Positions 1 to 62,052 of a stretch of 64,000 nucleotides of DNA are shown piece after piece. Position 1 is the stretch's first letter; the number at the start of each line of letters is the position of its first letter. A model generated the notes under the pieces. It searched no databases and had not been told where the DNA came from. It worked only from the letters and a program-made list of their open reading frames with translations. The DNA lies in contig NC_091999.1 of the NCBI RefSeq assembly GCF_044704955.1, forward strand, positions 65,658,001 through 65,722,000. The letters run 5' to 3'. Origin of the DNA: Pristiophorus japonicus. Its lineage: Eukaryota. The translations under genes were made by a program, and so were the position numbers.

Positions 1-232
1 TAACTGGGTCCTTAAGTGCAATGGCATTGACTTTTTGCAACACTGCTTCTGCTGCCCCCTTCGCTTTGGGGCTATGTTGATGTCAGTGATGGAACTGTTT
101 AGACGGTGGTCTGCCCAGTACTCGTCAGCTCCTGTTTTGGCATGAATGATGCGCACTTCCTTGCGATCGCTGGCTCGGACCATGGAATAGTCGAGCAGTT
201 GCTAGTGTTTGGAGCGAGGGTGTTTCGATGCT
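1..232 (-). mobile_element. RTE-clade LINE fragment (C-terminal part of the APE endonuclease)
   Basis: Minus strand reads HPRSKH*QLLDYSMVRASDRKEVRII...GADEYWADHRL, matching the RTE APE motif HPRSKHWHLLDYVIVR...DCWTDHRL. Confidence 0.75.
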
Positions 233-271
233 ATGAGACGGGAATTGGCTTGAATAGACTGGCGAGTGATA

Positions 272-2020
272 CTTAATCGGCTGACGGTGGATAGGCAATG
301 TCAAACATTTAAAGATCGCATGGATGAACTTCAACAATTGTACATCCCTGTCTCGAGTAAAAATAAAACGGGGAAGGTGGCTCTGTGAATGTTTAAAAAT
401 GAAAAGAGACATTGAAGTTGAGAACGTGGGAATTGTATAGGGACAGTCTAAGCTAACAAAGAATTCATGGAGGAATAGCCATGACATCTCAGACTCGAGA
501 CTGCGAAATGTTACAACACTGACACATATTGATACAAAACCCACAGCTTGCAGAAAAACCTCAAGGTCTTATTAAATCATGTTATTAACCTGAAACATTA
601 ACAAAAGGTCTTTATTTAAAATCAGACAATACTTAGGTCGGCTTATGAGTGGACAAAGGGAAAGAGGGATCAAAAGCAATAGGTTGAACTAGGATGTCAC
701 TCAAGACCTATCTTGTTATCTTTTGCCGAAAATGTATAACCGTCGTCCCTTTACAATGTAACGTCACCTTGTCCGTAGAAAGTGAGTGCGTTTTATCAGA
801 ATTGCATTCCTTCTGTCTGATAAGGTCCCCGATCGGGATTTGATTTTAAATAAAAGCTTGCTTTGTTTAAAGCACAAACGGTATTCGTTTCAGTAATTTT
901 GCTGAACCAGATTGAGGGAAAACAATCCACATTTACAGCTCAACCGTGGCTAACAAGGGAAATTAAGGATTGTGTTAAATCCAAGGAAGAGGCAAATAAA
1001 TTGGCCAGAAAAAACACCAAAACTGAGGACTGGCAGAATTTTATAATACTGCAGAGGAGGACAAAGGGTTTAATTACGATGGGGAAATAGAGTATGAGTG
1101 GAAGCTTTCTGGGAACATAAAAACTGAATGCAACAGCTTCTATAGATGTGAAGAAAAAAAGATCAGTGAGACAAACGTAGGTCCCTTTCAATCAGATTCA
1201 GGTGAATTTATAATACGGAACAAAGAAATGGTGGACCAGTTAAACAAATACTTTGGTTCTGTATTCACGAAAGAAGAGACAAATAACCTTCCAGAAATAT
1301 TAAGGAACAGAGGATACAGTGAGAAGAAGGAAATTAAGAAAATCCTTATTAGGTGGGAAATTTCGTTAGGAAAGTCCAATAAATCCCTGGAGCCGAATAG
1401 TCTGCATCCCAGCGTACTTTCGGAAGTGACCCTAGATATAGTGGATGCATTGGTGACCATTTTCCAACAGTCTATCGACTCTGGATCGGTTCCTGTGGAC
1501 TGGAGTGTAGTAAACGTAACACCACTTTTTAAGAAGGAGGGAGAGGGAGGCAGGTAATTATAGACCAGTTAGCCAGACATTAGTATTGGGGAAAATGTTG
1601 AAAGCACTTATTAAAGATGAAATAGCAGCACATTTGGAAAGCAGTGACGGGATCGGTCAAAGTTAGCATGGATTTATGAAAAGGAAATCCTGCTTGACTA
1701 ACCTTCTAGAATTTTTTGAGGATGTAACTGGTAGAGTGGACCAGGAATAACCGGTGCATGTGCTGTATTTTGACAAAATTAAAGAATATGATATTGCGGG
1801 TAATGTACTGACGTGGATAGAGAATTGGTTGGCAGAGAGGAAGCAGAAAGTCGGGATAAACGGGTCCTTTTCAGAATGGCAGGCAGTGAGTAGTGCCGTG
1901 CCGCAGGGCTGAGTGCTGGGACGCCAGCTATTTACAATATACATTATTGATTTGGATGAGGGAATTACGTTTAATATCTTCAAGTTTGCAGATGACATTA
2001 AGCTGGGTGGCGGTTTGAGG
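272..2020 (+). mobile_element. CR1-clade LINE ORF2 fragment, split by a solo LTR
   Basis: Peptides AQPWLTREIKD, LNKYFGSVFTKEE, HPSVLSEV, HGFMKRKSCLTNLLEFFEDV and KFADDIKLGG; frameshifted. Confidence 0.95.
384..937 (+). mobile_element. Solo LTR (TG...CA, 4-bp target-site duplication) inserted in CR1
   Basis: Begins TGTGAATG and ends CATTTACA (imperfect inverted termini), flanked by GCTC at 380-383 and 938-941. The CR1 sequence ggtggctc|aaccgtggc rejoins across it. AATAAA near 849. Confidence 0.8.
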
Positions 2021-2266
2021 CTTGTACGGGGCACTTGTTAAAAACTTGCATCTCAAGCAAAATTCAACTAAATATACGTCAATAAGTTCCAAAGATGTTA
2101 AAAATGTTGTGCATTATTTTTTGCTTTTTTGTGCGGGTGTCATGAAGCTCATATTTTTAATAATGCAAATATTAATGGGACACATTGACTATAAGAATGT
2201 CTTTACTTCTAACATTAATAAGAAAGTGACAGAGAAAGAAGGGGCGGAAAAGACAAAGCTTGGAAA

Positions 2267-2269
<3 letters not shown>

Positions 2270-2319
<50 letters not shown>
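2270..2319. repeat. (GA)n microsatellite
   Basis: Pure GA run. Confidence 0.99.
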
Positions 2320-2322
<3 letters not shown>

Positions 2323-2574
2323 TGACACAGATAAGCAGCTCAAGTTAAATTGACACAATGACATACAGGCAGGCAAACAAAGAGTTTGGAGAGATCCTGC
2401 AGTAATTGGATACGAATAACACTCATTGTTGCAAAACTGAAGACAATACTGTCCCTGGGAAACGCCCCTCAGTTACTTAATAAGTGAAGCCTGCCCCTGA
2501 TCTGGATTTAACCTTTAATATCACAAAATGTTTAAACATTCTGTTCTGTTCAATCGAAATCAAAACCAGGCACC

Positions 2575-2971
2575 ATGTGCATCCCGCGTTCCATACTCTT
2601 AATAATGGTCGTGCTGCCCGCTGAGTCTATGTTTAAATGCTCAGTGTCTGTTCATGGGCTATATTTATTCCCAGATATTGTAAACACTTTTATTTTGTTA
2701 CAGGAACGAGTGGCAAAGATTCAGTTTTCTGGATCCGTCTGAACTAAACGTTAAGGAGGAACAGACCACAATACTGAACTGCAGTTCCTCCACATCCGAT
2801 AGATTGCTCTACCTCTTCTGGTTCATCCAGTACCCCGAGGATGCTCAGAGATATTTACTGAGGAGATACAGCAAGGAACTGGGATTCGGCTCAAAGCATG
2901 AAAACGGTTGCTTTAAATGTGTCCGGGACTCCTGTGTCTGATTCTGCCGTGCATCAGTGTGCGCTTCCCTC
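2575..2971 (+). pseudogene. T-cell receptor alpha/delta-type V segment pseudogene 1 (leader 2575-2620, V exon 2704-2971)
   Basis: caccATG leader MCIPRSILLIMVVLP-G with a mutated donor (CTGAGT); acceptor ttgttacag at 2703, phase 1. V exon GTSGKDSV/fs/DPSELNVKEEQTTILNCSSSTSDRLLYLFWFIQYPEDAQRYLLRRY.../fs/KTVALNVSGTPVSDSAVHQCALP retains the first Cys, the Trp and a DSAxxxCAL motif. Followed by an RSS. Confidence 0.88.
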
Positions 2972-3010
2972 CACATTATTACAGGGGAACACACAATCTG
3001 TCCAAAAACC
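2972..3010 (+). other. 23-bp-spacer recombination signal sequence of V1
   Basis: Heptamer CACATTA 2972-2978, exactly 23 nt spacer, nonamer CCAAAAACC 3002-3010. Confidence 0.85.
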
Positions 3011-3370
3011 AGAAAAAGGCTCTCACTCACTCTCATTGAATCAGATCTGTGAACTGGATTGTGAACTGATAATGGATAAAAAAAATAGCATGAAATCTAG
3101 TTTGGCCAAATGACAAATTTCTTTGATGTAACTTCTGTGAAATTCTATGTAATATCGCCTTGATATCAGCTGGTTCTAATGGTCAGTGAGCTGTTCTTTT
3201 AGTGGAAGCCTCTGGCACTGATACCAGAACAACATTAACTACTTCCATTCACTGTCCGACCCGTACATACTGATCCTATTATTGGGCCAACATTTATATT
3301 AATCCCTATGCATTTTGCTGCTGTGAAAACAATGTCACTGCTTTCCCTGTTCCCCGCCCTGATTTCTTGA

Positions 3371-3564
3371 ATTGGAGAACAAAGGATCCGTGAGCTGATT
3401 GGAAGAATTTCAGAAAAAACGGTAGTGAGCTGATTGAATTGGCGAACAATGGAACTGTGAACTGATTGGATGAATTGGAGAAAAAAAAAACCGTTAACTA
3501 ATTGGATGTCACTTGCTGACTCCGACTAGAAAGAACCAATCGGCAGAGAGGCATCTTTCCCAAT
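3371..3564 (+). promoter_or_regulatory. Putative promoter of V2 with clustered CCAAT/Y-box motifs
   Basis: ATTGG at 3371, 3398, 3438, 3465, 3474 and 3501 (CTGATTGG at 3395 and 3462), CCAAT at 3536 and 3560, and a CRE-half-like GATGTCA near 3505, just upstream of the leader ATG at 3628. Confidence 0.4.
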
Positions 3565-3627
3565 CTTGACCAAAACAATACAGGTTCAAACCATTCTGTT
3601 AAAATGTGCCTACAGCTCTCTGCAAAT

Positions 3628-4508
3628 ATGTTCGCTGCGACTTTGTATTTGTTCGTCACAGCTGTAGCTCCATTAACGGGTAGCTTTGCAAGTTAAATAA
3701 CACCGTGTTGAACATCTATACCATACATTTAATCTGTCAATTCCATGAGCACAGAAAGATCAACAGATTGAACTGAAATAAAGAAACCCTTCTGCATCCA
3801 ACTTGACTCAACACTGAGCTCAGCTTTGGGAAACTCGACAAACTCCCAAAGTGTATGTGAGCGGATGGTCTGAGAAGCGATTCAAGCGAATGGCAGAGAG
3901 ACCCGCCCCACACCGCCGGGGCAATGGTGGACTTTGAAAGACACAGGTGTCTTAAAGCCTCGTCACAAGAAGTGACGGTCATGAATTGATCCCGCTGGAA
4001 GGTGCTCATTGTTAATTAACTGAACTTTTAATCAGTTCGTCCACCGCATTCCCATTGCAGCTGTGAGGAAATTCTCTTTAATTTCTGATTAACCGCCCAG
4101 AGTTACATCTCAGACAAGTGTTAGGGGTGACGGGCTGATTGTGGACGATAGACACAATGAAGTGACATTGTTTCATTTAGTATCGCTCTGGGCTCTTCCA
4201 GGGCATGGTCGTGGAAACTCCGTTTCTCAGGTACTGGCTGTAACCACATTAAGTAAAGGAAACGATGTTCATTTGCACAGTAATTATACAACTACAAGCT
4301 TGGTGACGGTTTACCTATTCTGTTACCGCCAGTATTGCAATTGTTCTATGGAATATCTGCTGCATAGAAACAAATACAGAGAGAACTGAGTGAGATTAAA
4401 AGCGGACCGTATTTCCGCGAACTTCAATGATTCGAGTGGAAGCATCCCGCTGAAGTCGTCTGAAAAACAACTGCGAGACTCCGCGATGTATTACAGCGCA
4501 CTGAGTCC
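3628..4508 (+). pseudogene. T-cell receptor alpha/delta-type V segment pseudogene 2 (leader 3628-3679, V exon 4202-4508)
   Basis: Leader MFAATLYLFVTAVAPLT-G|GT; acceptor tcttccag at 4201, phase 1. Single-frame V exon GHGRGNSVSQVLAVTTLSKGNDVHLHSNYTTTSLVTVYLFCYRQY...EYLLHRNKYREN*VRLKADRISANFNDSSGSIPLKSSEKQLRDSAMYYSALSP. Both Cys are Ser, Trp is Cys, one stop at 4387. Followed by an RSS. Confidence 0.9.
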
Positions 4509-4547
4509 CACAGAGGTACAGAGCTTGGCTGGAATGGTACAAGAACG
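4509..4547 (+). other. 23-bp-spacer recombination signal sequence of V2
   Basis: Heptamer CACAGAG 4509-4515, 23-nt spacer 4516-4538, nonamer ACAAGAACG 4539-4547. Confidence 0.88.
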
Positions 4548-4713
4548 GTCATAGCATCGCTCAACATTCCAATACTTTTGTGGAACATTGTGATCAGGGG
4601 CGCGGCTGAGCTGGCTCCTGTATATATGATCAGACCTTGTAATGTTAATTCTAATATATATTCACTTTCATGAATAATAACCAGATAATCAAAAGCACAA
4701 ATGTAGTTAAATT

Positions 4714-5031
4714 AGAAAAAAAAGGTATTGATACAGCGGCTTTCACGACATCTTAAAGTGGTTAACATACAATGAAGTACTTTTGGAGGGTAGTCACATT
4801 GTAATGTAGGGAACGCAGTAGCGATTTTTTGAACAGCAAAATCTCTCAAACAGAAATGTGATAATGACCAGATAGTCTGCTTTCGCAAGTTTTTTTGAGT
4901 AGTAAATATTGACCAGGATAACAGGACAATTCCCCTGTTCTTTTTCGAAATATCGCCATCCATTACATCCTCCATAGTTTCAAACAATTCCTCAGTTTAA
5001 CAGCGCATCCGAAAGGCGACACCTCCGACGT
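4714..5031 (-). mobile_element. Deu-domain SINE (SacSINE1/AmnSINE1-like), 3' part
   Basis: Reverse complement contains GTCGGAGGTGTCGCCTTTCGGATG..GTTAAACTGAGG, CTGGTCATTATCACATT and CCTACATTACAA..GTGACTAC..AAAAGTACTTCATTG, typical of Deu SINEs. Confidence 0.8.
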
Positions 5032-8000
5032 TCCGCTCTATGTGTAGTAGCTCTATCTGATCTTTCCATTCCACTCTGGTACAGTAATTATTTTTGATCT
5101 GTCCATTCCGCTCCCCTCTGCGTGCAGTCGTTCTACTTGTTCAGTCCATTCTTCTCTATCTACAGTAGTTCTATCTGATCTGTCCATTCCCCTCTGTTTG
5201 CAGTAATTCTATCTGATCTATGCAATGCAGAGAGTAGTTCTATCTGATCTGTCCATTCAGCTCTGTGTACAATAATTATATCTAACCTGTCCATTCCACT
5301 CTGTTTACAGTCGTTCGATCTGACCTCTACATTCAGCTCTCTGTATAGTAGTTCTATCTGAGCTGTCCATTCCCCGCTGTGTGTAGTACTTCTATCTGAG
5401 CTGCCCATTCCCCTATGAGTAAAGCATTTCTACCTGACCTGTACATTCCCTTCTGTGTGTAGTACTTTTATCTGAGCTGCCCATTCCCCTCTGAGACTAT
5501 CATTTTAACCTGACCTGTCCATTCCCCTCTTTGTGTTGTACTTCTATCTGAGTTGCCATTCCCCTCTGAGTACAGCATTTCTACCTGACCTGTCCATTCC
5601 CTTCTACGTACAATGGTTCTACCTGACATGTCCATTCCCCTCGGTGTTCATTAAATCTATCTGATTTGTCCAATGCGTACAGTTGTTCTATCTGATCTAT
5701 CCATTGAGCTCTGTGTACAATAGTTCTATCTGACCTGTCCATTCCCCTCTGTGCGTAGTACTTCTATCTGAGCTGCCCATTCCCCTCCGAGTATAGCATT
5801 TCTACCTGACATTTCAATTCCCCTCTGTGTACATTAAATCCATCTGATCTGTGCAATGCGTAAAGTAGTCCTATCTGATCTGTCCATTCAACTCTGTGTA
5901 CAGTAGTTATATCTGACATGTCCATTCCCCTCTGTTTACAGTCGTTCTATCTGATCTGTCCATTCCCCTCTGTGTACAGTAATGCAAACGTATCTGCACA
6001 TTCCTCTCTGTGTACAGTAGTTCTATCTGACCTGTCCATTCCTCGCTCTGTTCAGTACTTCTATCTGAGCTGCCATTCCCCTATATGTATAGTATTTCTA
6101 TCTGATCTCTTCATTTTCCTCTGTGTGTATTAATTCTATCTAATCTCTGCATTTACCTCTGTGTTCACTAGTTCTATTTGCTCTGTCGAATCCCTTACTT
6201 GTACAGTAGTTCTGTCAGAACTCTCCATTACTTTCTGTGTACAGTAGTTCTATCTGATCTGTCGGTTCACGTCCCCTATCTGTGCAGTGGTTCTCTGTGA
6301 TCTATCGATTCCCCCCACCCTCTCTGTACATGAATTCCACCTGAACTCTCTATTCAAATCTATGTGCAGTAGTTCTATCTGATCTGTCCATTCCCCTCCG
6401 TGTACAGTAGTCCTAGCATATCTATCCATTACTCACTGAGTGCACTAGTTCTATCTAATCTGAGCATTCCCCTTTGAGTACAGTAGTTCTGTTTGATATG
6501 TGCATCCCTCTCTGTGTGCAGTAATTATCTTGATCGCTCCATTCCCCTTTGCGTAGAGTAGATTTTTCTGACCTGTTCGTTCCCCTGTATTTAGTAGTTT
6601 TATCTGATCTGCCCATTTCCCTCTATGTGCAGTAGTTATCTAGTCGTGGCCCCCCGACCTGCGAGAGAACAGCTCCGCAGGTTGGGCTACAACAGAGCTG
6701 GAGCTGCGGTCCTGGAACATCTTGGCCTCCGAACTGTGAGAGAACAGCTCTGCAGGTCGCGCTATAAAATAGCTGGATTGGCAGGCCTGGGACATCGTGG
6801 CCCCCCTGACCTGCGGCAAAATAGCTATAAAAGAGCTATTAAAGAGCTGCAGCATACCACTTCAACCTCCAGCACGAGCTGCTTCAAGTGTGCACTGATT
6901 TTGAGATGGACGACTCCGTTTTAGAGCATGGGGATGAACATCGGCTGGGCCCAGTTACAGAGGAGTGGAAAGGTCGGGGCTGATGAGCGGTGATAGATCG
7001 TGCCAGACGTGTGACAGATGAGGGTACGGATCCTAGAAGAGCCGATGGCCCAGGAGCAGTACGGACCAGCCCACACTGCGAAATGTGTGCGCACTAGGAC
7101 CATAGAGCAGAGCAGGACTCCAGTCGTTTTGGTTAATTCTTGCCACTGGACCATGACTTAGCTCTGTCAAGCCCACGGTGGCTGGCGTGCAACGGTCACC
7201 ACACGTTAACAAAATTTCACGCCGAGGCATCTTAAGCCACCTCAATTGGAGTTCAGTACTGGATCATTGGGTCCTTCATCGAAACACCTGTGAACTAGTG
7301 GGAGCAAGTCAGCTTTGTTCGAGGTACCGCCTATGATGATGGTGAATAGTTATATGTGATCAATACATTCTCCTGTATGTACATTACTTCTAGCTGATCT
7401 ATATATTTCCATCTATGTATACTTCTATCTGATCTGACCATTGCCTTCTGTGTGCAGGTGTATCTGATCCGTCCATTCCACTCTATGTACAGTAATTGAA
7501 AAAGATCAACCCATTCCCCTCTATATACACTATTTGTGTCTAATCAGCCCTTTCCACTCTGTGTGCAGTAGTCCCACCTGATCGGTCCCCTCCCATCGAT
7601 GTACAGTAGTTCTAACTCATCTGTTCTATGTGATCTGTCCATTCTCCTCTGTGCGTAGAAGTCCTATCTGATCTCTCCATTCCCGTCTGCATACAGTAGT
7701 GCTATCAGATTGGTACATTCTGTGTACAACCGCTCTATATGATCTGTCAATTCTCGTCTGTGTGCATTCGTTCTATTTTATCTCTCAGTTCACGATCACT
7801 CTGTGTGCAGTGATTCTATCTGATTTGTCCATTGAACTATGTTTTCCGTCGTTCTATCCGTTCTCTCCATTCATCTCCCTTCTGTGTGCATTCTTTCTAA
7901 CTGATCTGCCCATCCACCTTTGTGTACAGTAGTTATTGTTGATATCTCCATTCCGCTCCCCTCTGTGTGCAGTAGTTCTATCTATTCTGAGCATTCCCCT

Positions 8001-8898
8001 CCGTGTGTAGTAATTGTATCTAATTTGCCTATTCCCCTTTGTGTGTAGTAGTTCTATCTGATCTCTACAACCCCTACTGCTTGCAATAGTTCTATCTGAT
8101 CTGGCCGTTCCGCTTCCCTACGTGTGCAGTAGTTCTTTCTGATCTGTCCATTTCCGTCAGTGTACAGGAATTCATTCTGGTCTGTCCATTCCCATCTGTG
8201 TGCGTTAATTCTATCTGGTCTTTCCATTCCCCTCCGTGTGCAGTGGTCCTTTCTGTTCTGTCCATTCCCCTCTGTGTAAAGGAGGTCAGTCTGGTCTGTC
8301 CATTTTCATCTGTGTGCATGAATTCTATCTGGGCTGTTCATTTCCCTCCCGTCTGTGTCAATAGTTCGATCTGATCTGAGCCTTCCCGACTCTGTGCAAT
8401 AGTTCTATCTGACCTGTCCGTTCGCCTGTGTGTAGTAGATCTGTCGTATCTGTCCATTCCCCTTTCTGTACAATAGTTTATCTGATCAGTCCAAATTCCT
8501 CTTTGTAGAGTAATTCTATCCGATCAGCCCATTCACTTCTGTGTGCAGTAATTCTAATTGATCTGTCCATTCCCCTCTCTGTACATTAGTTCAATCTGAT
8601 CTATTCATTTCCCTCTGTTACATTAGCTCTATCTGATCTGTCCATGCCCATACGTGCACAATATTTCTATCTGATCTGTCCATGCCCCTCCCCTCTGTAG
8701 ACAGTAGTTCCATCTGATCTCTCCATTCACCACTGTGTATCGTCTTTCTACCTGAACTTTATTTCCCCTCCCTGTTTTCAGTAATTATATCTAAATCCTC
8801 CATTCCTTCTGTGGGCAGTAGTTCTAAATGATCCATGCATTCCACTCCCCTCTACGTCCAATACATCTATCTGATCTGTCCATTCTCCTCTATGTGCA
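5032..8898. repeat. Degenerate 38-bp minisatellite array
   Basis: Unit approximately CTCTGTGTACAGTAGTTCTATCTGATCTGTCCATTCCC (period 38, e.g. 5171/5209); interrupted at 6643-7343. Confidence 0.97.
6643..7343 (+). mobile_element. Non-autonomous element with an RTE-type 3' tail
   Basis: Ends GAGCAAGTC..TTCGAGGTACCGCCTATGATGATG, like the RTE tails at about 27000 and 56170. Body is homologous to 17237-17827 and to 25775-26085 (reverse). Confidence 0.75.
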
Positions 8899-9860
8899 TG
8901 ACCCTCCCAATCTCACAGTCTCCCGCCCCGCTGTCTCCACACCATGACCAAACCCCAACCACCACTCTCACAGTCTCTCGCCCCGCTGTCCCCACACCAT
9001 GACCACACTACCACCCAATCTCACAGTCTCCTGCCCCGCTGTTGCCACACCATGACCAGCCCCCACACACCCAATCTCACAGTCTCCCGTCCGCTGTCCC
9101 CACGCCATGAGCAGCCCCCCACCCAATCTGACAGTCTCCAGCCCCGCTGTCCCCACACCATGACCACACCGACCCCACCCAATCTCACAGTCTCCCGCCC
9201 CGCTCTCCCCACATCATGGCCGCCTCCAAGCGCACCATTCCCGCCCTGCTGTCTCCGCACCATGACAACCCTGCCTCCTAATCGCACAGTCTCCTGCCCC
9301 GCTGTCCCCACAGTATGACCACCCTGCCACCCAATCGCAAAGTCACCCGCTCCGCTCACCCCACACCATGAACCCCACCAATGTCACAGTCTTCTGCGCG
9401 CTCTACCATACCATGATCCCCCCCACCAATCTCACAGTCTCCCACCCCGCTGTCCCCACACCATGACCTGTCCCCAACTCAATCTCACATTCTCCTGCCC
9501 GCTACCCCCACACCATGACCACACCGCCCCCACCCAATCTCACAGTCTCCCGCCCCGCTCTCCCCACACCATGGCCGCCTCCAATCACACAGTCTCCCGC
9601 CCTGCTGTCTCCGCACCATGACAACCCTGCCTCCCAATCGCACAGTGTCCTGCCCCGCTATCCCCAAACTATGGCCACCCTGCCACCCAATCGCAAAGTC
9701 TCCCGCCCCACTCACCCCACACCATGAACCCCACCAATGTCACAGTCTGCTGCCCGCAATCCCATACCATGAGCTCCCCAACCAATCTCACAGTCTCCCG
9801 CCCCGCTGTCACCACACAATGACCACCTGACTCCCGTCCCCACCCAATCGCACAGTCTCT
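8899..9860. repeat. C-rich ~52-56-bp minisatellite
   Basis: Unit approximately CCAATCTCACAGTCTCCCGCCCCGCTGTCCCCACACCATGACC..., with a higher-order duplication of about 356 bp (near 9180 versus 9536). Confidence 0.95.
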
Positions 9861-10949
9861 TGCACCACTGTGTTCGTTCTGTCCGGTTTTATCGGTTCTG
9901 GTCAATAATTACAACTGCTGTTTGGATTGTTTTTATCCGCTTACATCATTGTGATTTTCGATAGCGGCGCCATTATATTGGATATTCAGGCGGAGCGGAC
10001 CCTGCACACTTCATTGTACCTGTTAATCTGTATTGGCAACGTTTGTTATTTGTTACTTCACAGTCAGTATACGGAATACATTACCGAACATGGTGTTACA
10101 TCACAGTCAGTGTACGGAATATATAAGCGAACATAGTGTTACCAGCAAAAACCATTTCGTATGGAAGCTGCATTAATCAAATGTTCGTCGTCTACAATCG
10201 TCTGGAAGGTGACTTTATAATATTATCTAACATCGTTCATGATCGAAATGTTTTTCTTTGCAACCCACTGCGATATTCAACCATGATCGCAACATCAAAT
10301 CTGATAAAGACTCACCTCGTTCTCTGAGCGATAAACTACTCCGTCGTCTTAGTCTACCTTTGCCTCAGCCTGCGGCTGCCCTTTTGCAGCTGCGAGGTCA
10401 TTTAGATAATAGTCTGCAACTACATGTCCGTGGCCAAGTTTTCCTTCGGAGACATCTCAAGGAATAGCATGTTCTGGAAGTGTGAGATGCTCACTGTCTC
10501 CTTATTGTTATCTGTTTCATTAGCTTCCGTTATTGTAAGATCGGCTTTGCTATTTTCAAGAATAATTCACAGGCGGTGCGGCAGAAGGCGATCCAGAGTT
10601 GTGCCTCCCACCTGTCTGTTTTCTGTATAAATGTTGTGTCTATTTGTCTCATTATTCTACCTTACAGAATTAAATCCATGCCGCCAATTCCCGCAATGTG
10701 ATGATGGCTGTGACGGCATTACATGCTCCGCTCTCAGATCGTGTCACTTACTTTTGGAGAACAAAGCAGGTCGTCTGGTGGGGCGGGGCATGCTTCAAGG
10801 GTCCGCAGAAAACTCGAGTTGGAAACACAACCAGAGTTTCTGTCATTACCTAATGTCAGTTGGTATGAATCACGGAGTAGTTTCTTGCTAACTGTTCAAT
10901 GGCCATATGAACGGCATAAATTGCATGCAGCATATGTAAGATAGATTTA

Positions 10950-11521
10950 CATACACACAGACACGAACTGACAGACTCACTCTCTCTCGCTCTCTCTCTC
11001 ACACAAACACACACAGTGGCACTCTCACACACACCCACTCCCTTTCACACTCTCTCTCACATCCACACTCGCTTTCATACACGCACACACTCACGCTCTC
11101 AAACACACTTACTTACACACCCACTCTCTCTCACAAACACTCACAATTTCACATGCACTGACTCACTACTCTCACACTCTCTCTCTCACATCCACACTGG
11201 CTTTCATACATGCACATATTCACGCTCTCATACACACTTACTCACACGCCCACTCTCTCTCACAAACACTTACACATAGACAAACACACCCACGCACACA
11301 CAGTTTCTCTCTCACACAAACATTGACTCTCTCTCTCTCAAAGACACACATACAGTCACACCCTTACACACGCTAATTCACGTATACACTTTCCCTCACA
11401 AACGCACATAATCTCTCTCTCCACACAGAGACACACACACTCTCACACAAACTGACTCGCACTCACTGACTCTATATCACACGCACACACACACTTTCTC
11501 CCCCACACAAACATACACACA
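10950..11521. repeat. CA/CT low-complexity tract
   Basis: Imperfect (CA)n/(CT)n with internal duplication. Confidence 0.95.
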
Positions 11522-12799
11522 AAATTCAAATATTACTTCTTACTCTCATGTGGGTCAGAAACACAGTCACATTCACCAAGGGAAGTCACAACCATAACTG
11601 CATGTTGAAAGTTGCTGCAATCAATGTTTGGCCTTCATCATTCGCTGATATTGTTGATCCCAGATCGTGTCCAGCCTCCGAATACGTTTACTGCAGGCCG
11701 CGCTTTCATTATTTACTGCATGTAAACGTGCGAAGCTCCACATGTTTTGTTTATCATTTACTACCAATAAACTGTGAGCACCGACTCAGTAATAACTTTG
11801 CAATGAAACGCACAAATCTGATTCTCCATCCGAAACGTATGTTGCCCAATATCTGACTGCTTATATTCAGTTGCATTAAGTAATTGGTGGCTGTCGACAA
11901 ACTTCAAACTTCAAATGGTAGTATTTCAAATATTATTTTTATAGTGTAATTCCCGATGTTGCCGCTTGGATTAATTTCCTTATATTTTAGATATAAACGT
12001 CGATTCGGCTTATTATTGTCCGCAGCATTTTAAACTGACACAATAATGTGCTGACACTTTAATGCCTGTGTAAACATCATGCCTATGCGTAATGTGCGGT
12101 CAATGGGCCAACTACAGAGTAGGGGTGTTTATCTACGCTGCATTACCGAGTTACCTACTGGTATCATATCTCCTCTGAGAAACGAATGTGTCGTGTGCAA
12201 TTTACCCGTACAATCAGGAAAATCACAGATTCGCGCTGTTATTGTGGTTATAAAGCAGCGCCGTTATCAAGTTGAGTTATCAGCCAATATAATTTGTTTT
12301 GTGCTTAAGCAATATATTGATAATAGCAAATGCAATCATTGTATTAAACTAATGTAATCGACACAGTTCTGTGTTGTAGGTTATGAAACAATGTGCAGCA
12401 GAATGCTTAGCTGGAAATACAAGTCGAATACTGATCACTTCTGTGTGTCTGTGTCACATCATAAATCTAATCGCTGTAAAATATGAATCCAAAATTCATC
12501 TAAAATATTGCTGCACCTAATGGACCGATTTTAACAAATACAAAGCAGTTACCAGCTTCTAACCCTCTTGGACACAGCTCCTCATGTCAGATCTGGACCC
12601 TATTGTTCCTGCGCCCGGAAATTAAATATCGGGAAACTAATTAATGCATCGCAGTGATTGACTTCAACAGATGTCGGTTCATCTTGAAAGATCTCACGCT
12701 GTTTGAGAGATGGCGGGTGGAGAATTAGACTGTAGTCTATTCATAGAATATTGGAGAGGTAAGATTTATCATACTCAGAAAAGGGTCAAACATAAGGAA

Positions 12800-13310
12800 C
12801 CATATGGAGGTTCGGCTCAAACGGGAGTATTGTGTACAATTCTGGGCACTGTATATTAGGAAGTAAGTGAAGGCATTAGAGAGGGTGGAGAAAAAATAAT
12901 GGATATTATATCAGGAATGAGGGAGTTCAGTTACATTGATAGACTGGAGAAGCAGGGGTTATTCTCCTTCGAGCAGAGAAGATTGAGAGGAGATTTGATA
13001 GAGGAGGGATCTGGACAAGTAGATAACCTATTCGGATTTGCAGGAGTGTCTAGATGCAGAGGATACAAATTTAAGGTGTTTGGCCAAAGGCGATGTAAGA
13101 AAACACCTTTTTACAGAGCGAGTGATTAAGATCTGGAATGCACAGCCTGAAAGGGTGGTGGAGACAGACACTATCTTATCTTTAAAAAAGGAAGTTGAAT
13201 AAGTATCTGAAGGAAAAAAAAAGGGCTTCGGCAAAAGGGAGGGGTAGTAGGACCAGCTGAGAGTCGGCACGGGCTCGATGGGCCGAATGACCTTCTTCCG
13301 TGCTCTGTAG
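12800..13310 (+). mobile_element. CR1 LINE 3' fragment
   Basis: EYCVQFWA, MREFSYIDRLEKQGLFSFEQRRLRGDLIE and a CR1-type 3' UTR. Confidence 0.9.
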
Positions 13311-18810: not shown

Positions 18811-19299
18811 ATCTGCCTTTTAACACTTCAAGCACCTCGTTCAAATCACCCCTAAAATTCCCATACTCACTGAAATAGAATGCAATTTTATGGATAACCT
18901 ATGTAACCTGCCCACATAATTTAACCTACGATGGCCCGGTAAGAATCTGGTGAATCCTTGGTCCAGCCCCTCTGATGGCCAATATATCCATCCTAAGGTG
19001 AGATGCCCAAATCTGAACTTAGTTTACCATGTACAAAGGTCTAACCAGAATGACACTAGAGCCGGAGAGGGGAATGGAGGTGGTGGTGATGATGCAGCGA
19101 ATATGGCGGGCAATGAAAAAGATAGTTTAATTCTTCCCAACCCTTCACTGTATTAAATTGTGGCTCATCAAAGACTGATCACAGAGGCAGTGCAGGTGGA
19201 GATAAATCAGAGGAGTTAAGGCTGAAGTGGGCAAGTTCTACACTGAGTTTCATCATGCGAAATTGTATGTAATTGCGCTGAATTGGACTTCTCCACATG

Positions 19300-27005: not shown

Positions 27006-29429
27006 GTCGTTCCATTGTGTTGTTGATATTAGCAGTTGCTGGCTCAGTTCTACAATTTGTTCATTAATTCCGATTATTTGCTAATGAAATTTAATTAATT
27101 AACTTGTTGAATATACATTATTTTGTGGTGAATTGTTGACATAAATATATTCAGTGCAATATGTGGCCGTTTTCAGCATGAATGTATATTTGCCAAAAAC
27201 TTACACAGCAAGCGTTACTGCTCTCCAACTCTGACTCTCACTGGTTCAGGCCGGCTCTTCTCTTCCACATTCGCAGCTGCTGCGAGTTCGAAAGCGACCG
27301 CTGCTGTGACTGGGAGTGCCTTATGGTCATAACACCTGGCAATGTCCCGGATTGTCCGCGTTTTCAAACTTTTCGAGACATGGACTGACGCCGCATAACT
27401 GGTTACATCTCTGGTATCTGAGTCACAAAGTTTAACGTTCAATATCCACACTCGGACTAAGCCAATTATTTATCTTGACAGCGCAGTACTGAACAAGTAT
27501 TGCATTGTTGGAGGGGCCTTTTACTGATCAGCTCCTCCTCACCTGCCAGTTCCAATGGGTCAGATTGACACCGACGATCCAAGGTGATCATCAGCAGAAG
27601 AGTTCGGAGTTTGCACCTCGCTGTTTGGGAATATGTTTGCGCAAGTTGACTGCTGAATTTTCCAATAGTGAATCATTTTACAGTAATTAATCAGATTAGG
27701 GTCTTTACGGTCAGCCGCAAGCCACAATCCGTTTTTATGCATTCTTCCTTTTTTCTTGTTACTTCTTCTTAATAACCTCTCAAATATCTTCTGTAAGCGC
27801 TTCTGAAATGTTAGTTTTGTTGACAATCTGATGACTCCATGTTGGTTTCCAGGTTTGCCGATGAGTTACTTTTCTCCATTATCATTCTTTACTTTATTTT
27901 ACATTACGATGTCATTGGCCTGTCAAATGTTTTATCCGGATCATTAATAAATCATGTGGTCAAAGTTTTAAATTTCACACATTATCCTGCCAAATGGATG
28001 ATTTTGCCTGGAGTCGGACCAGTAATATTACTGTTCTCGATCAATCACACACATTCACTCGCTCTGTCCCTTTCTCACAGATATTCACTCGCTTCCTCTC
28101 TGTCTCACACATTCTCTCTCTGTTACAGCTAAATTAGCAGTCATTGTGATCCTGCGTCGAGGAAGGTGCGGTCTCTCCAGATGTGTCACTCGGTATCTGG
28201 TGGCCATGGCCGTAACGGATCTGCTCGTCATTTTCGCCGCTGCTATATTAAACCGGATTGTAGGTATTTATTTCCCATTTAGCTTCCTGTCCATCACTCC
28301 GGTCTGTCGTTTCCATGTCGCCGTAATCTATGCAACCATAGACTGTTCTGCCTGGTTAACGGTCGCTTTCACCTTTGATCGATATGTGGCCATTTGTTGC
28401 CAGCAGCAGAAAGCAAAATATTGCACCGACAAAACCGTAGTAGTGGTTATTAGCAAGGTCTGTTCAATGAGTTGCTTAAAGAATACCGCATTGTATTTTA
28501 TATATGTACCTTTGTACACAGTTAACAACATACCCTGGTTCTGCAGCATAAGAAAAACATTTTATACATCAACAGCTTGGGTCGCATATGACTGGATTTT
28601 CCACATTTTAACTCCATGTCTCCCATTCATTCTGATTTTACTGCTCAATGCACTGACCGTCAGGCACATTTTAGCGGCCAGTTGACCCCGTAGGAGACTC
28701 CGGGCAAACAGCAATGGAGAGAATCCACACGATCCAGAGATGCAGAAGCGGAGAAATTCCATTGTTTCACTCTTCTGTATCTCGGGCAGTTTCAGCATGT
28801 TAAATGTTTTATTACTTAGAACTTTCATCTATGTCCAGATTGGGAGAATTATCTATTTCTCAGGTTCCACTGTCAATGAATCAAATATTATCCTGGAGGA
28901 ATGTGGATATATGCTTCATCTTTTGAGTTCCTGCATCAACCCGTTTATTTATGCAGGACCCAGAATAAATTCAGAGAGGAGGTAAAGAATGGGGTGAAAT
29001 ATCCACTGAGTCTCACTGTTAAATTATTTCAATTCTAAACAGAGTAAAGTATATAATGAATTGTACCTTGCTGTGCTCTCCTTTCCCGTGTCAGACGGGG
29101 CCTCCGCTCTCAGGTACACAGTCACTCGCTGTAAGATCCATACCCAATGTGAAATTAAGGAGATACGAGCAACAGTGATTCAGCGCACAATTCAGTGCTG
29201 TAACCCATTCTCAGTAAGTTTCCATTTATTTTTTCGGTACGGACTAAGGCCGTGGATTATTTCTACATTTAAGCCGGAAACCGATAGTGCGACCTTGGAC
29301 ATGTGATGGGAGATCAAGTTTAACATTTTAATCAAATGACCCAATATCCCCGCTGGGAATGATTTCTTTCTTCAGGGTCGGGCATGCTCTTACCAGGGAG
29401 GTGGCTTTTTCTGCAAACAATGTTTCTCG

Positions 29430-43677: not shown

Positions 43678-45097
43678 TTATCTGCATTTCCTGTCTAATC
43701 TCAGAATGAGTGCCCAGAGAGATTTCACATAATTCTTCAGCACTGTTCTGAATTTCCCCTGGGTGGCTGCGTAAATGCACGGGTTTTGAATGCTACTCAA
43801 AAACTTCAATAGAGTTCCGGTTTCCATGGTGATATATCCAGGGACTGTGCGGTTGCCTCGGTAATAAGTGGTCTTTGGCAGACTGGTAGTAACAAAGCTC
43901 ATGGCAGATGTCAACCACATCTGTACAAAACTGTGCGATATAGTGAACAGAAAATGATGGATTTCCTTCGGTTCTGCATCTCTGTTTCGCTATGATTCTC
44001 ATTCCTGAGACGCCGCAGTCCCCTGCGAGGTCTATTGGCCACTAATACATGATGGATAGTTAATGAATTAAACAGGACAATTAAAGTAAAATGAAGCCGA
44101 ACAACCCAAGCGCAATCAAATCAGACGTACACTGCACCTAATGGTCAGTGAAAAAACGCCGATCTTGACTGGCAGCCCCAAAGCACATTGTTGATCTTTT
44201 GCTGAGGTTCATATGCAAACAAAAGACGAATATCCTTGAAACAACTCAAAACAAAAAATGTTGTTATAACCGCAGCCGCAGATTGCACAGTCCAATATCT
44301 TGATTAAATTTATGGTAACAGAGAGCTACATATCGCTCAAATGTGAAGAAGATGGTGAACCAAACAGACAAATCAAAGGTGACCGTTGTCATGTAAATAA
44401 TTAGCCGACACTAGGAAGTATGGGACAGCAATGAAAATTGAAAGTGGTAACTGAAAATATCATACACTGTTACATTGATCATGACCAGTAGATCCGCTGC
44501 TGCCATTGCCATCATGCAGACCGAGATACACTTGCAAAGGCCGCACTTTCCTCGGCAGAGAATCACAATTGTCAACAAGTTCGCTGTAAGAAAGAGAGAG
44601 GAGATAAATAATGTTGTAGTGTTTGAATGAAATAGACACGGAGATACCTGTTGAGAACATTCCACTCCATTCAGTGTGATTATCAACATTAAGCAGTGTA
44701 AGAACACGATTATTAGTGCAGCCATTGCCTGGGTATAATCCCCAAACATTTAATGAGCCACTGCAGCACTCATGATGCACAGTGTAAAAAGAACGGCTGG
44801 AAATCCGCTAAAAATCTAAGCGTTGACCTTCAAAATTCATTGTGATCGCTAAGATTATCGGATTTTAAGGAATGTGGTCAGTGCAGACATGCAGTTGACG
44901 ACCTTGTTCCGGTCACTACCGAATGTGTGACGCTGACATCCTGGAAACACATTAACTTATCCAACGGGCTGTAAGATGATGGAAACAACTAAAAGAGATT
45001 AACAACAAACAGGTTACATTGGCTCATCGGGAATACCGAGGGCTGCGAGAATCGGGTAGTAAATCTGTTTAGTCATAACAATAATCGGTCGCCCCAT
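43678..45097 (-). pseudogene. GPR139/GPR142-like GPCR pseudogene, copy 2 (exon 1 45028-45097, exon 2 43678-44583)
   Basis: Exon 1 MGRPIIVMTKQIYYPILAALGIP with the donor mutated to AT; exon 2 ANLLTIVILCRGKCGL..AMAAADLLV..FTFERYVALC..QNPCIYAATQGKFR; TAG at 44411 and frameshifts. Confidence 0.92.
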
Positions 45098-50764: not shown

Positions 50765-52185
50765 TTAATCGCATTTTCTGACTAATCTCAGAATAATTCT
50801 CAGAGAGATTTCACGGAATTCTTCAGCTCTGATCTGAATTTCCCCGAGGTTGCTGTATAAAGGCACGGGTTTTGAATGCAACTCAAAAACTTCAATAAAA
50901 TCCCGATTTCCGTGGCGATATACCAAGGTGCTATGCGGTCGGCTCGTTAATAAGTGTTGTTTGTCAGTCTAGTAGTTACAAAGCTCACGGCAGCAGTCAG
51001 CCTCAACAGTATGAAACTGCCCGATTAATGAACAGCAAAATGATGGATTTCCTTCGGTCCTGCATCTCTGTTTCGCTATGATTCTCATGCCTGTGACCCC
51101 GCAATCCCCTGCGGGCTCTATTGGCCACTAAAATAGGATGGATAGTTAATGAATTAAACAGGACATTTAAAGTAAAAGGAAGCCAAACAACCCATGCACT
51201 GTGAAACCAGACGTACGCTGCACCTAAAGGTGAGTGAAAAAAAGCCGCTCTTGACTGGCAGCCCCAAAGCACATTGTTGATTATTTGCTGAGGTTCATAT
51301 GCAAACAAAAGAAGAATATCCTTGAAACAACTCAAAACAAAAAATGTTGTTCTAACCACAGCCGCAGATTGCACGGTCCAATATCTAGATTTAAATATCT
51401 GGTAACAGAGAGCACCATATCGATCAAATGTGAAAGAGTCGGTGAACCAAACAGACAAATCAAAGGTGACACTTGTCATGTATATAATTAGTCTCCACAC
51501 AGAAGTGTGGGACAGCAATGAAAATAGAAAGTGATAACTGAAAATATGCTACACTCCTACATTGATAATCATGACCAGTAGATCCGCTGCTGCCATTGCT
51601 TTCATGTAGACCGAGATACACTTGGAAAGGCCGCACTTTCCTTTGCAGAGAATCACAATTGTCACCAAGTTCGCTGTAAGAAAGAGAGAGGAGGGAAATA
51701 CTGTTGCAGTGTTTGATTGAAATAGATAGGGAGATACCTGTTGAGAGCATTCCACTCCATTCAGTGTGATGACCAACATGAAGCAGTATGAGAACAGGAT
51801 TATTAGTGAAGCTATTACCTGGGTAACATCCCCTGCATTTAACGAGCCACTGCAGCGCTCATGATGCAAGGGGTAAAAAGAAGATCTGGAAATCCGCTAA
51901 AAATCCATGTGTTGACCTGCCAAATTCATTGTGACCGCTAAGATTATAGGATTTTAAGGAATGCGGTAAGCGCAGACATGCAGTTCATGACCTTGTTCCA
52001 GTACTACCGACTGTGTGACGCTGACATCCTGGAAATACATTAACTTATCCAACTGACTGCAAGATCAAAGAGACACTAAAAACCGATTAACAACAAACAG
52101 GTTACAATGGCTCACCGGGGACACCGAAGGCTGTGAGAACCGGATAGTAAATCTCTTTGATCAGAACAATAATCAGTCGCCCCAT
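50765..52185 (-). pseudogene. GPR139/GPR142-like GPCR pseudogene, copy 3 (exon 1 52116-52185, exon 2 50765-51673)
   Basis: Exon 1 MGRLIIVLIKEIYYPVLTAFGVP-G|GTGAG; exon 2 ANLVTIVILCKGKCGLSKC..DLLVMIINVGV*HIF..FTFDRYGALC..WLPF; in-frame TAG at 51549 and a frameshift near 51025. Confidence 0.93.
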
Positions 52186-60632: not shown

Positions 60633-62052
60633 TTATCCGCATTTTCTGTCTAATCTCAGAATGAGTGTCCAGAGCGATTTCACGGAATTCTTCAACTCTG
60701 CTCTGAATTTCCCCTGGTTTGCTGTATAAATTCACGGATTTTGAATGCAACTCAAAAACTTCAATAAAGTTCCAGATTTCGTGGCGATATAGCCGGGACT
60801 ATCCTGTCGCCTCAGTAATAAGTGGTGTTTGTCAGTCTGGTAGCTATAAAGCTCACGGCAGCACTCAGCCGCAACAGTATAAAACTGTCCGAAATAATGA
60901 ACAGCAAAATGATGGATTCCCTTCGATTCTGCATCTGTGTTTCGCTATGATTCTCACTCCTGTGACCCTGCAGTCCCCTGCGAGCTCTATTGGCCACTAA
61001 AATACGATGTATAGTTAATGAATTAAACAGGACAATTGAAGTAAAAGGAAGCCAACCAACCCCTGCTCTGTGAAGTCAGACGTACGCTGCACCTAAAGGT
61101 GAGTGAAAAAAAGCCGCTCTTGACTGGCAGCCCCAAAGCACATTGTTGATTATTTGCTGAGGTTCATATGCAAACAAAAGAGGAATATCCTTGAAGCAAC
61201 TTAAAATAAAAATGTTGTTATAACCGCAGCCGCAGATTGCGCGGTCCAATATCATGATTAAATTTCTGGTAACAGAGAGCTACATATCGATCAAATATGA
61301 AGGAGACAGTGAACCAAACAGACAAATCAAAGATGACAGTTGGCATGTATATAATTAGCCTACCTTCGGAAATGTGGGACAGAAATGAAAATGAAAAATG
61401 ATAACTGAAAATATGATACACTGTTACATTGATGATCATGACCAGTAGATCAGCTGCTGCCATTGCAAGCATGTAGACTGAGATACACTTGGATAAGCCG
61501 CACTTTCCTCGGCAGAGAATCAGAATTTTCACCAGTTCGCTGTAAGAAAGACAGAGAGGAGAAATAATGTTTGCAGTGTTTGATTGAAATTGACACGGTT
61601 ATACCTGTTGAGAGCATTCCACTCAATTCAGTGCGATTATCTACATGAAGCATTGTGAGAACAGAATTATTAATGCAGCCATTTCCTGGACAACATCCCC
61701 AAACATTTAATGAGCCACTGCAGCGCACATGATGCACGGGGTAAAAAGAAGGTCTGGAAATTCGCAGAAATCTATGAGTCGTCCTTCAAAAATCATTGTT
61801 ATCGCTGAGAGTGTCGGATTTTAAGGAATGCGGTAAGTACAGACATGCCCTTCACGACCTTATTCCAGTCACTACCGACTGTGTGACACTGACATCCTGG
61901 AAACATATTAACTTATTCAGCAGGTTGTAAGATCAAGGAGAAAATAAAAACCGATTAAGAACGAAAAGGTTACAACGCTTACCAGTGACACTGAAGGCTG
62001 CGAGAATCGGGTAGTAACCCTCTTTTATCAGAACAATAATCGCTCGCCCCAT
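60633..62052 (-). pseudogene. GPR139/GPR142-like GPCR pseudogene, copy 4 (exon 1 61983-62052, exon 2 60633-61539)
   Basis: Exon 1 MGRAIIVLIKEGYYPILAAFSVT-G|GTAAG; exon 2 is frameshifted right after AN, then ILCRGKCGLSKC..AMAAADLLV..FIFDRYVALC; a second frameshift near 61260 and further stops. Confidence 0.92.

What the first reader, a model, noticed from the sequence alone, without database searches (positions are those of the whole stretch)
2575..4547. Two hidden TCR alpha/delta-type V segments with intact 23-RSS spacing, pointing into a GPCR array
Seen: two tandem + strand units of leader exon, phase-1 intron, Ig V exon and heptamer-23-nonamer, both coding-dead, which the ORF track only shows as fragments. 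Established: 23-spacer RSS and DSAxYYCAL ends are typical of TRAV/TRDV. I found no D, J (12-RSS plus FGxG) or C segment in the 59 kb downstream. Inference: either the GPCR cluster and the fossil gene lie inside or at the edge of a shark TRA/TRD V array, or these V segments are orphons copied to a repeat-rich site. In the first case, any deletional V-to-J joining from upstream V segments would excise the GPCRs in T cells.
Basis: partly seen in the sequence, partly recalled or inferred. Interest (0 to 1): 0.8.

Follow-up and report, generated by a model that had tools for sequence, protein, structure and literature searches.

The report
Two dead sawshark TCR V segments
Two broken T-cell-receptor variable gene segments, each still followed by its recombination signal, lie beside equally broken smell-receptor-type genes on a Japanese sawshark chromosome; they are ordinary relics of a layout already reported for sharks.

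Summary
Two + strand V gene segments (V exons 2704-2971 and 4202-4508) each end in ...CAL/SAL and abut a heptamer, an exactly 23-base spacer and a nonamer. Their best named matches are TCR alpha and delta V domains.

Both are dead. Unit 1 has a G>C splice-donor change, at least two frame changes and a 36-letter gap in FR3. Unit 2 has a TGA stop, has lost both cysteines and the tryptophan, and has a wrecked leader.

I found no J, D, constant-domain exon or further V in the window. All four GPR139-like GPCR copies downstream are broken, and so is an olfactory-receptor fossil at 9.9-10.8 kb. Nothing functional would therefore be excised.

An annotated sawshark protein matches the window exactly, so the genome is Pristiophorus japonicus. 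Contigs from DNA runs show that the two-V block also exists elsewhere in this genome at about 90-95% identity, with intact letters where this copy is broken.

TCR alpha/delta-type V exons scattered on the shark antigen-receptor chromosome were published in 2025. This scan had already noted similar dead V segments elsewhere on the same chromosome. Whether this pair lies inside the TRA/TRD array or is an orphon cannot be settled from one window. Interest is low.

The parts
2575..2620 (+). Unit 1 leader exon (L-part1), 46 nt, phase 1, hydrophobic MCIPRSILLIMVVLPA
   Evidence: tblastn of bamboo-shark V model P0021 also reaches the leader.
2621..2703 (+). Unit 1 leader intron (83 nt). The donor reads CT instead of GT. 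The acceptor AG is at 2702-2703.
   Evidence: In one search, look-alike contigs of the same genome read G at 2621 (10 contigs in each of X1 and X3), which gives a canonical GTGAGT donor.
2704..2971 (+). Unit 1 V exon, a TRAV/TRDV-type pseudogene. It has a frame change near 2726-2733, one or more frame changes near 2870-2900, and a 36-letter gap at 2883/2884 relative to look-alike contigs. The YYC motif reads HQC.
   Evidence: Pfam V-set E 6e-5 on the 63-aa piece. PDB: 50 of the 60 listed hits are TCR alpha constructs, best E 5e-5. 60 proteins at E<=1e-3 in the representative library. Frames. Look-alike contigs.
2972..3010 (+). Unit 1 recombination signal: CACATTA, 23-base spacer, CCAAAAACC (3 mismatches to consensus)
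3981..4062 (+). Candidate wrecked leader exon of unit 2 (weak). ATG 3981, stop at codon 3, GTGAGG donor at 4063, 82 nt so phase 1 by length.
   Evidence: Read from the sequence. No protein match. Inference only.
4202..4508 (+). Unit 2 V exon, a TRAV/TRDV-type pseudogene of a different subgroup. It has TGA at 4387-4389, Cys23>Ser, Trp41>Cys and Cys104>Ser.
   Evidence: PDB: 29 of 30 hits are TCR alpha for piece 4198-4386, all weak (best E 0.021). 40 of 44 hits are TCR alpha or delta for piece 4390-4503, best E 0.007. tblastn E 2e-14. Exact contigs with 0 differences cover 4182-4356 and 4343-4550. It shares 41% identity over 27 aa with unit 1.
4509..4547 (+). Unit 2 recombination signal: CACAGAG, 23-base spacer, ACAAGAACG (3 mismatches)
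9909..10780 (+). Context: olfactory-receptor-type (7tm_4) pseudogene 5.4 kb behind unit 2, with at least 3 frame changes and stops
   Evidence: Gene model P0181 of Pristiophorus japonicus is built from it.
28113..29035 (+). Context: GPR139-like GPCR pseudogene. It has an in-frame stop at 28683-28685 and a second stop plus a frame change near the 3' end.
43696..44605 (-). Context: GPR139-like GPCR pseudogene (stops and frame changes)
50809..51692 (-). Context: GPR139-like GPCR pseudogene (stops and a frame change)
60651..61526 (-). Context: GPR139-like GPCR pseudogene (stops and frame changes)

Best explanation
[quoted passage not shown] They sit head-to-tail on the Japanese sawshark chromosome that carries the antigen-receptor complex.

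Each once worked as an ordinary V: leader exon, phase-1 intron, V exon and 23-spacer signal for RAG-mediated joining to a 12-signal J or D. Both have since lost the ability to encode a chain, and only the signals remain recognisable.

The two-V block, spacer included, was copied as a unit by segmental duplication. Sister copies elsewhere in the genome keep the letters that are broken here.

Shown: the identity as alpha/delta-type V, the signals, the lesions, the existence of look-alike copies, and the absence of J, D or C partners in the window. Inferred: that the pair is no longer used, and that it belongs to the scattered TCR-type V population of the shark antigen-receptor chromosome and not to the working TRA/TRD array.
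For: V type: Pfam V-set. TCR alpha and delta V dominate the PDB matches for three separate pieces. There are 60 library hits at E<=1e-3. 20 were looked up by name: one is a named TCR alpha V region and three are shark or skate V models.

Signals: both are exact 23-spacer signals abutting the V ends, against 0.2 expected per strand.

Lesions. Unit 2's lesions lie in contigs identical to the window.

Look-alike copies: of 139 X1 contigs laid, 82 are 90-95% alike, and they cover both the exons and the spacer. They read G at 2621, carry 36 extra letters at 2883/2884 and an extra A behind 2730, and differ where unit 2 has its stop.

Partners: no J (0 of 16 motifs), no D, no C1-set domain and no other V.

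Neighbours: all are dead.

Against: Use was not tested. No RNA or thymus run of this species holds the stretch, and the two small runs of unknown kind that were laid gave nothing.

The window's own letters in about 2785-2940 of unit 1 were not seen in the listed contigs. Only look-alike contigs were laid there. Unit 1's internal lesions therefore rest on the assembly alone.

Both signals keep the critical CAC and most of the nonamer, so RAG cutting is not excluded.

The location relative to the TRA/TRD J-C region rests on unchecked notes of this scan.
Confidence: 0.85

Rival explanations
1. The pair lies inside or at the edge of the working TRA/TRD V array. V-to-J joining from V segments further upstream would then delete this whole stretch, GPCR relics included, in T cells.
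For: Both V segments are co-oriented and keep usable-looking 23-signals. Unchecked scan notes report TCR-type V segments about 0.51 Mb before the window and a V array about 0.52 Mb beyond it. In mammals, olfactory-receptor genes sit among the first TRAV genes (PMC4574546), and an olfactory-receptor fossil lies 5.4 kb behind unit 2.
Against: There is no J, D or C in the 59 kb downstream. The notes put the NAR-TCR/TRD parts 54-56 Mb upstream, the side these V segments point away from. The same notes describe the other V groups on this chromosome as dead relics beside dead IgM genes. Every gene in the window is broken.
Confidence: 0.1
2. The segments are intact in the animal and look dead only through assembly errors.
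For: The window's own letters in about 2785-2940 were not confirmed by the listed contigs.
Against: Unit 2's stop and all three lost key residues lie in contigs identical to the window (X1 records 6 and 7, X3 record 16), though these are probably from the same animal. Unit 1 has five or more independent lesions, including a 36-letter gap, which is not a typical sequencing error.
Confidence: 0.03
3. They are V domains of non-rearranging IgSF receptors, such as the germline-joined VJ receptor families noted elsewhere in this genome, and the recombination signals are chance look-alikes.
For: Signal-like sites with up to 4 mismatches are common, about 10 per window per class.
Against: Both exons stop right after CAL/SAL with no J-like FGxG. 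At the stricter setting two signals at the two V ends have a chance of about 5e-10. The best named matches are rearranging TCR alpha or delta V domains.
Confidence: 0.02

Closest known systems
TCR alpha/delta-type V exons scattered among IgH clusters in the elasmobranch antigen-receptor complex (Flajnik et al. 2025, PMC12227049)
   Same: A shark, TCR alpha/delta-type V exons outside an obvious V-J-C unit, and (by unchecked scan notes) the same chromosome as IgM relics and the TRA/TRD parts.
   Different: No Ig cluster is visible in this window. The neighbours are GPR139-like and olfactory-receptor pseudogenes. The species is not among the four mapped in that paper. Its table S1 (coordinates) was not seen, because supplements were closed.
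V pseudogenes of TRA/TRD loci (IMGT functionality class 'pseudogene': stops, frameshifts, lost conserved Cys or Trp, defective splice site; class definitions recalled, not from a call)
   Same: L-part1, intron, V exon and 23-signal layout. The same kinds of lesions.
   Different: Membership of the TRA/TRD locus proper is not shown.
Orphons (IG or TR V genes outside the main locus; concept recalled)
   Same: Non-functional V segments with no J or C partner nearby, in repeat-rich DNA.
   Different: They appear to be on the same chromosome as the main locus, and V groups are reported 0.5 Mb to either side, so 'outside the locus' is not established.
Olfactory-receptor genes interspersed with the first TRAV genes of mammals (human OR10G2 and OR4E2, mouse Olfr1507-1509; PMC4574546)
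   Same: Rhodopsin-type GPCR genes, including one of olfactory-receptor type, lie next to TRAV-type V segments.
   Different: Here everything is a pseudogene. Orthology of the shark fossil to those mammalian genes is untested. Most of the GPCRs belong to the shark-expanded GPR139-like family and are not olfactory receptors.

Membership tests
TRAV/TRDV germline V gene segment | Leader exon, phase-1 intron and V exon | tested here: met
   Unit 1 meets it: 2575-2620, 2621-2703 and 2704-2971. Unit 2 has the acceptor and an L-part2-like start at 4202, but its leader is only a wrecked candidate at 3981-4062.
TRAV/TRDV germline V gene segment | V-set fold markers Cys23, Trp41 and Cys104 | tested here: inconclusive
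   Unit 1 keeps all three. Unit 2 has lost all three by single-base changes to Ser, Cys and Ser. This fits a decayed member.
TRAV/TRDV germline V gene segment | Sequence closer to TCR alpha or delta V than to other V classes | tested here: met
   PDB: 50 of 60 listed, 29 of 30 (all weak, E>=0.021) and 40 of 44 including 11 labelled delta. The remaining named hits in these lists are antibody light chains or scFv constructs, except one unrelated protein. In one search one of the 40 TCR hits carries a beta label and one hit has no informative name. No shark TCR reference set was available, so alpha and delta cannot be told apart.
TRAV/TRDV germline V gene segment | 23-spacer recombination signal directly after the V exon | tested here: met
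   Both spacers are exactly 23 bases, with 3 mismatches each in heptamer plus nonamer. No RIC score could be computed.
TRAV/TRDV germline V gene segment | Open reading frame (functional V) | tested here: not met
   Unit 1 has a CT donor, at least 2 frame changes and a 36-letter gap. Unit 2 has a TGA stop. Both are pseudogenes.
TRAV/TRDV germline V gene segment | Observed rearrangement or expression | not testable with these tools
   No RNA or lymphoid DNA run of the species holds the stretch.
TRAV/TRDV germline V gene segment | Position within the TRA/TRD locus, upstream of and co-oriented with TRAJ-TRAC | not testable with these tools
Only unchecked scan notes speak to this.
TCR-type V exons of the elasmobranch antigen-receptor complex (PMC12227049) | Lies between or beside IgH clusters on the TCR alpha-delta chromosome | not tested
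   No Ig C1-set exon was found in the window. IgM relics 0.52 Mb beyond the window and 3.6-4 Mb before it are reported only in unchecked notes.
Orphon | Located outside the main locus | not testable with these tools

The most novel reading that the evidence does not exclude
The order V, V, olfactory-receptor fossil, then GPR139-like copies is one copy of a large module repeatedly co-amplified along more than 50 Mb of the sawshark antigen-receptor chromosome. The module would hold an IgM cluster, TCR alpha/delta-type V segments, GPR139-like GPCRs and an olfactory-receptor gene. Its receptor-next-to-V adjacency would be a remnant of an ancestral jawed-vertebrate arrangement that survives as the olfactory-receptor genes among the first TRAV genes of mammals.
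Probability: 0.12. Interest if true: 0.55.

Novelty: new member of a known kind. Interest (0 to 1): 0.15.

Why it matters
On its own it matters little. It adds two dead V segments to the known scatter of TCR-type V exons on the shark antigen-receptor chromosome.

It is useful as a marker. The lesions give diagnostic letters for telling this copy from its live sister copies in repertoire data. The look-alike contigs show that V blocks here spread by segmental duplication, spacer included.

The one thread worth a specialist's time is the repeated neighbourhood of TCR-type V segments with GPCR genes, including a rare shark olfactory-receptor fossil. This could be tested for shared ancestry with the olfactory-receptor/TRAV boundary of mammals.

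Tried and rejected
Searches that gave nothing useful:
- The search for homologous proteins with the 63-aa unit 1 piece found nothing. That tool only sees proteins of 35-110 aa for this query, so the blank says little.
- The search of earlier findings by sequence was blank.
- The names of 20 of the 60 library hits were mostly 'hypothetical' or 'Ig-like'. The V class therefore rests on the PDB names.
- No RNA run holds the stretch. The one read-laying run used DNA contigs and two small runs of unknown kind, and the latter gave nothing. It listed no joint at 2971/2972 or 4508/4509, but this is no test, because the tissue is unknown and contigs drop rare forms.

Features looked for and not found:
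The best match has 6 mismatches of 15 within 150 bases behind each nonamer.
- J segments: 0 of 16 [FW]GxG motifs have an upstream signal with fewer than 6 mismatches of 16.
- D segments: 0 pairs of facing signals.
- Constant exons: no C1-set, ig or I-set family among 147 of the 167 stop-free segments of 80 aa or more. The 20 inside the tandem repeat at 29332-33596 were dropped. None either among 106 shorter segments from 1-5000 and 8000-20000. Short broken Ig pieces in 20-64 kb were not scanned with Pfam.

Readings considered and rejected:
- Unit 2 as a leaderless NAR-TCR supporting V. It starts with an ordinary L-part2-like stretch and follows an ordinary V with its own signal, not a NAR V-D-J. 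This is inference.
- A recent tandem duplication giving units 1 and 2. They share only 41% identity over 27 aa and align poorly as DNA.
- The third strict signal-like site at 44778. It has no V in front of it, and 0.2 such sites are expected per strand, so I take it as chance.

Literature. Searches found the 2025 paper. One search (GPR139, shark, expansion) listed 4 papers, none on this topic by title or abstract. I therefore know of no paper on GPR139-like arrays beside shark TCR V segments, but this rests on that one search.
Full report
What is there.

Reading 2300-4800 and translating it in three frames shows two V gene segments on the + strand.

Unit 1 has an ATG at 2575 and a 46-nt hydrophobic leader exon (2575-2620). 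An 83-nt intron follows, ending in AG at 2702-2703. The V exon (2704-2971) keeps Cys23, Trp41 and Cys104 and ends ...DSAVHQCALP. It is followed at once by CACATTA, 23 bases, CCAAAAACC (2972-3010).

Unit 2 has an acceptor AG at 4200-4201. Its V exon (4202-4508) starts with an L-part2-like G-H-G-R-G then NSVSQ, and ends ...DSAMYYSALS. It is followed at once by CACAGAG, 23 bases, ACAAGAACG (4509-4547).

Loose signal look-alikes (up to 4 mismatches) are common, about 10 per window per spacer class in shuffles. At the stricter setting that both real sites meet (CAC start, at most 3 mismatches, spacer exactly 23), only 0.2 are expected per strand. Three occur on the + strand, and two of them sit exactly at the two V ends. 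The chance of that is about 5e-10. The third, at 44778, has no V in front of it.

What kind of V.

I never joined them, nor leader to V exon.
- The 63-aa core of unit 1 matches Pfam V-set (E 6e-5, just under the curated cut-off).
- In the PDB, 50 of its 60 listed hits are TCR alpha constructs (best E 5e-5). The other 10 are antibody light chains or scFv constructs.
- Unit 2's first piece gives 29 TCR alpha hits among 30, all individually weak (best E 0.021).
- Unit 2's FR3 piece gives 40 TCR hits among 44, 11 of them labelled delta (best E 0.007).

A search of 1.84 billion representative proteins with the unit 1 core found 60 proteins at E<=1e-3. I looked up 20 of them by name. One is a 'T-cell receptor alpha chain V region' and three are shark or skate gene models. 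Most of the rest are unnamed Ig-like models from other vertebrates.

The two units share only 41% identity over 27 residues. They are therefore different V subgroups, not a recent tandem pair. Alpha and delta V cannot be told apart, as is usual for this shared V pool (established knowledge, recalled).

Both are dead.

Unit 1:
- The start of the V exon (GTSGKDSV) reads in one frame, FR1 to CDR2 in a second, and the FR3 end (KTVALNVSGTPVSDSAVHQCAL) in the first again. There are thus at least two frame changes.
- The splice donor reads CT.
- The usual YYC reads HQC.

Unit 2:
- It has TGA at 4387-4389.
- By the PDB alignment, single-base changes have turned Cys23 to Ser, Trp41 to Cys and Cys104 to Ser.
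- Its only leader candidate (ATG 3981, GTGAGG donor at 4063) has a stop at codon 3.

What the reads add.

Four DNA runs of one sample hold the stretch. No RNA run does. Contigs identical to the window cover 3563-3968, 4182-4356 and 4343-4550. Unit 2's lesions are therefore in the reads, though probably of the same animal.

Between about 2785 and 2940 only look-alike contigs were laid. Unit 1's internal lesions thus rest on the assembly alone.

Most laid contigs are look-alikes: in X1, 82 of 139 are 90-95% alike. They cover the spacer between the V segments as well as the exons. Examples are 2979-3211, 3197-3482, 3471-3653, 3821-3968 and 4120-4378, each about 91-92% alike. The whole two-V block therefore exists elsewhere in this genome as diverged copies.

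These copies are informative at the points where the window is broken:
- Ten contigs per run read G at 2621, which gives a canonical GTGAGT donor.
- One contig has an extra A behind 2730, where unit 1 changes frame.
- Two contig variants in X3 carry 36 extra letters at 2883/2884. By my own reading, not a tool's, these encode the Asp-Phe...Arg-Phe-Ser stretch that bamboo-shark V models P0003 and P0021 have at that point of FR3.
- Contigs that leave the window at 4383 read, by eye, a sense codon where the window has its stop.

This is the pattern expected of pseudogene copies of V families that have better-preserved members elsewhere.

No partners, and dead neighbours.
- tblastn of all 60 V-type hits finds only these two V loci. 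All other matches have E>=0.005.
- None of the 16 [FW]GxG motifs in six frames has a signal upstream with fewer than 6 mismatches of 16.
- No pair of facing signals marks a D.
- Pfam on 147 of the 167 stop-free segments of 80 aa or more found RVT_1 four times, 7tm_1 four times and V-set once, with no constant-type Ig domain. The 20 segments in the tandem repeat at 29332-33596 were left out.
- The four 7tm_1 loci belong to the large shark family annotated 'probable G-protein coupled receptor 139': 1082 relatives at E<=1e-5, the best 84% identical, from Pristiophorus japonicus. All four carry stops and frame changes when laid against that relative.
- A scan of shorter segments turned up an olfactory-receptor-type (7tm_4) pseudogene at about 9909-10780 on the + strand, 5.4 kb behind unit 2. 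It is in at least three frames. All 13 of its PDB hits are olfactory receptors.
- A 100-aa UniRef entry of P. japonicus, 'olfactory receptor 1D2-like', is a gene model made from exactly this locus by skipping the frame change. This also fixes the species.

Where this sits.

Notes of this scan, which I did not check, place several features on the same chromosome piece:
- a TCR V 0.51 Mb before the window;
- an IgM relic with a TCR-type V array 0.52 Mb beyond it;
- further dead V segments beside dead IgM genes 3.6, 4.0, 17.6 and 42 Mb before it;
- NAR-TCR parts and the main V array 54-56 Mb before it;
- GPR139-like genes mixed with IgM and TCR segments at several places;
- another olfactory-receptor pseudogene beside TCR V segments 46 Mb before the window.

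Flajnik et al. 2025 (PMC12227049; outline, section 6 and term look-ups read) mapped all IgH isotypes near TCR alpha-delta in three sharks and a ray. They state that some TCR alpha-delta-type V exons lie between the IgH clusters. The present pair fits that picture as two more decayed members.

If the TRD parts really lie upstream, these + strand V segments point away from them. Deletional joining would then be impossible and inversional joining over tens of Mb implausible.

GPCR genes among TRAV genes are known. Human OR10G2 and OR4E2, and mouse Olfr1507-1509, lie among the first TRAV genes (PMC4574546, Background passages read). Excision of such genes by upstream V-to-J joining is therefore not a new concept. 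Here it would remove only pseudogenes. The dichotomy 'array edge or orphon' stays open. I put about 0.1 on the working-array reading.

What remains mildly interesting.

Sharks have very few olfactory-receptor genes: 8 in catshark and 7 in elephant shark (PMC6368271, passages read). A fossil of one beside TRAV-type V segments, possibly twice on this chromosome, invites a test of whether this adjacency is ancestral to jawed vertebrates. It also raises the question of whether IgM clusters, TCR-type V segments and GPR139-like genes were amplified together. I could not test either. The olfactory-receptor pieces match class I and class II receptors about equally, and the automatic cluster names are not orthology.

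Verdict.

The V-type call is right. Both segments are pseudogenes in a stretch where every gene is dead. The layout is a further example of a published arrangement that this scan had already met elsewhere on the same chromosome. Interest is low.

Noticed in passing
window 9909-10780 (+): An olfactory-receptor-type (Pfam 7tm_4) pseudogene lies 5.4 kb behind V unit 2, in at least three frames with stops. The public P. japonicus entry 'olfactory receptor 1D2-like' (100 aa, P0181) is a gene model built from it by skipping the frame change. Sharks have only about 7-8 such genes, and in mammals they sit among the first TRAV genes.
   Followed up: partly
window 28113-29035 (+), 43696-44605 (-), 50809-51692 (-), 60651-61526 (-); also 20255-20347 (+): Four copies of the shark-expanded 'GPR139-like' GPCR family are present, all with stops and frame changes. 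A separate 31-aa match to the N-terminus of the same family lies about 7.8 kb before the first copy, with reverse-transcriptase (LINE-like) fragments at about 24.1-25.7 kb between them.
   Followed up: partly
window 2400-4700 (from DNA-run contigs): The two-V block, including its non-coding spacer, has diverged copies (about 90-95% alike) elsewhere in the same genome. The leader and donor region is the most multi-copy part, with 10 look-alike contigs per run.
   Followed up: partly
window about 5035-8000: A long tandem array of a 38-bp unit (41-52 copies found, about 60-89% alike) starts about 500 bp behind unit 2's signal.
   Followed up: no
window 29332-33596 (+): A tandem repeat gives long open frames (up to 385 aa) of a recurring HCSHSLGNGSPHC-like peptide. 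It has no credible Pfam family and looks like a satellite, not a gene.
   Followed up: no
window 8900-9900 and 10900-11900: Proline/Thr/Ser-rich repeat frames and TC/CA-rich simple repeats flank the olfactory-receptor fossil on both sides.
   Followed up: no
window 1027-2040, 24132-25713, 40502-41266, 56126-57021, 59446-60036 (+): Reverse-transcriptase (LINE-like) fragments are scattered through the window. One ends about 500 bp before unit 1's leader, followed by a (GA)n run at about 2270-2320.
   Followed up: no
window 44778 (+): A perfect heptamer CACAGTG is followed after 23 bases by a weak nonamer, just outside the start of a GPR139-like pseudogene. There is no V in front of it, so I take it as chance.
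   Followed up: yes
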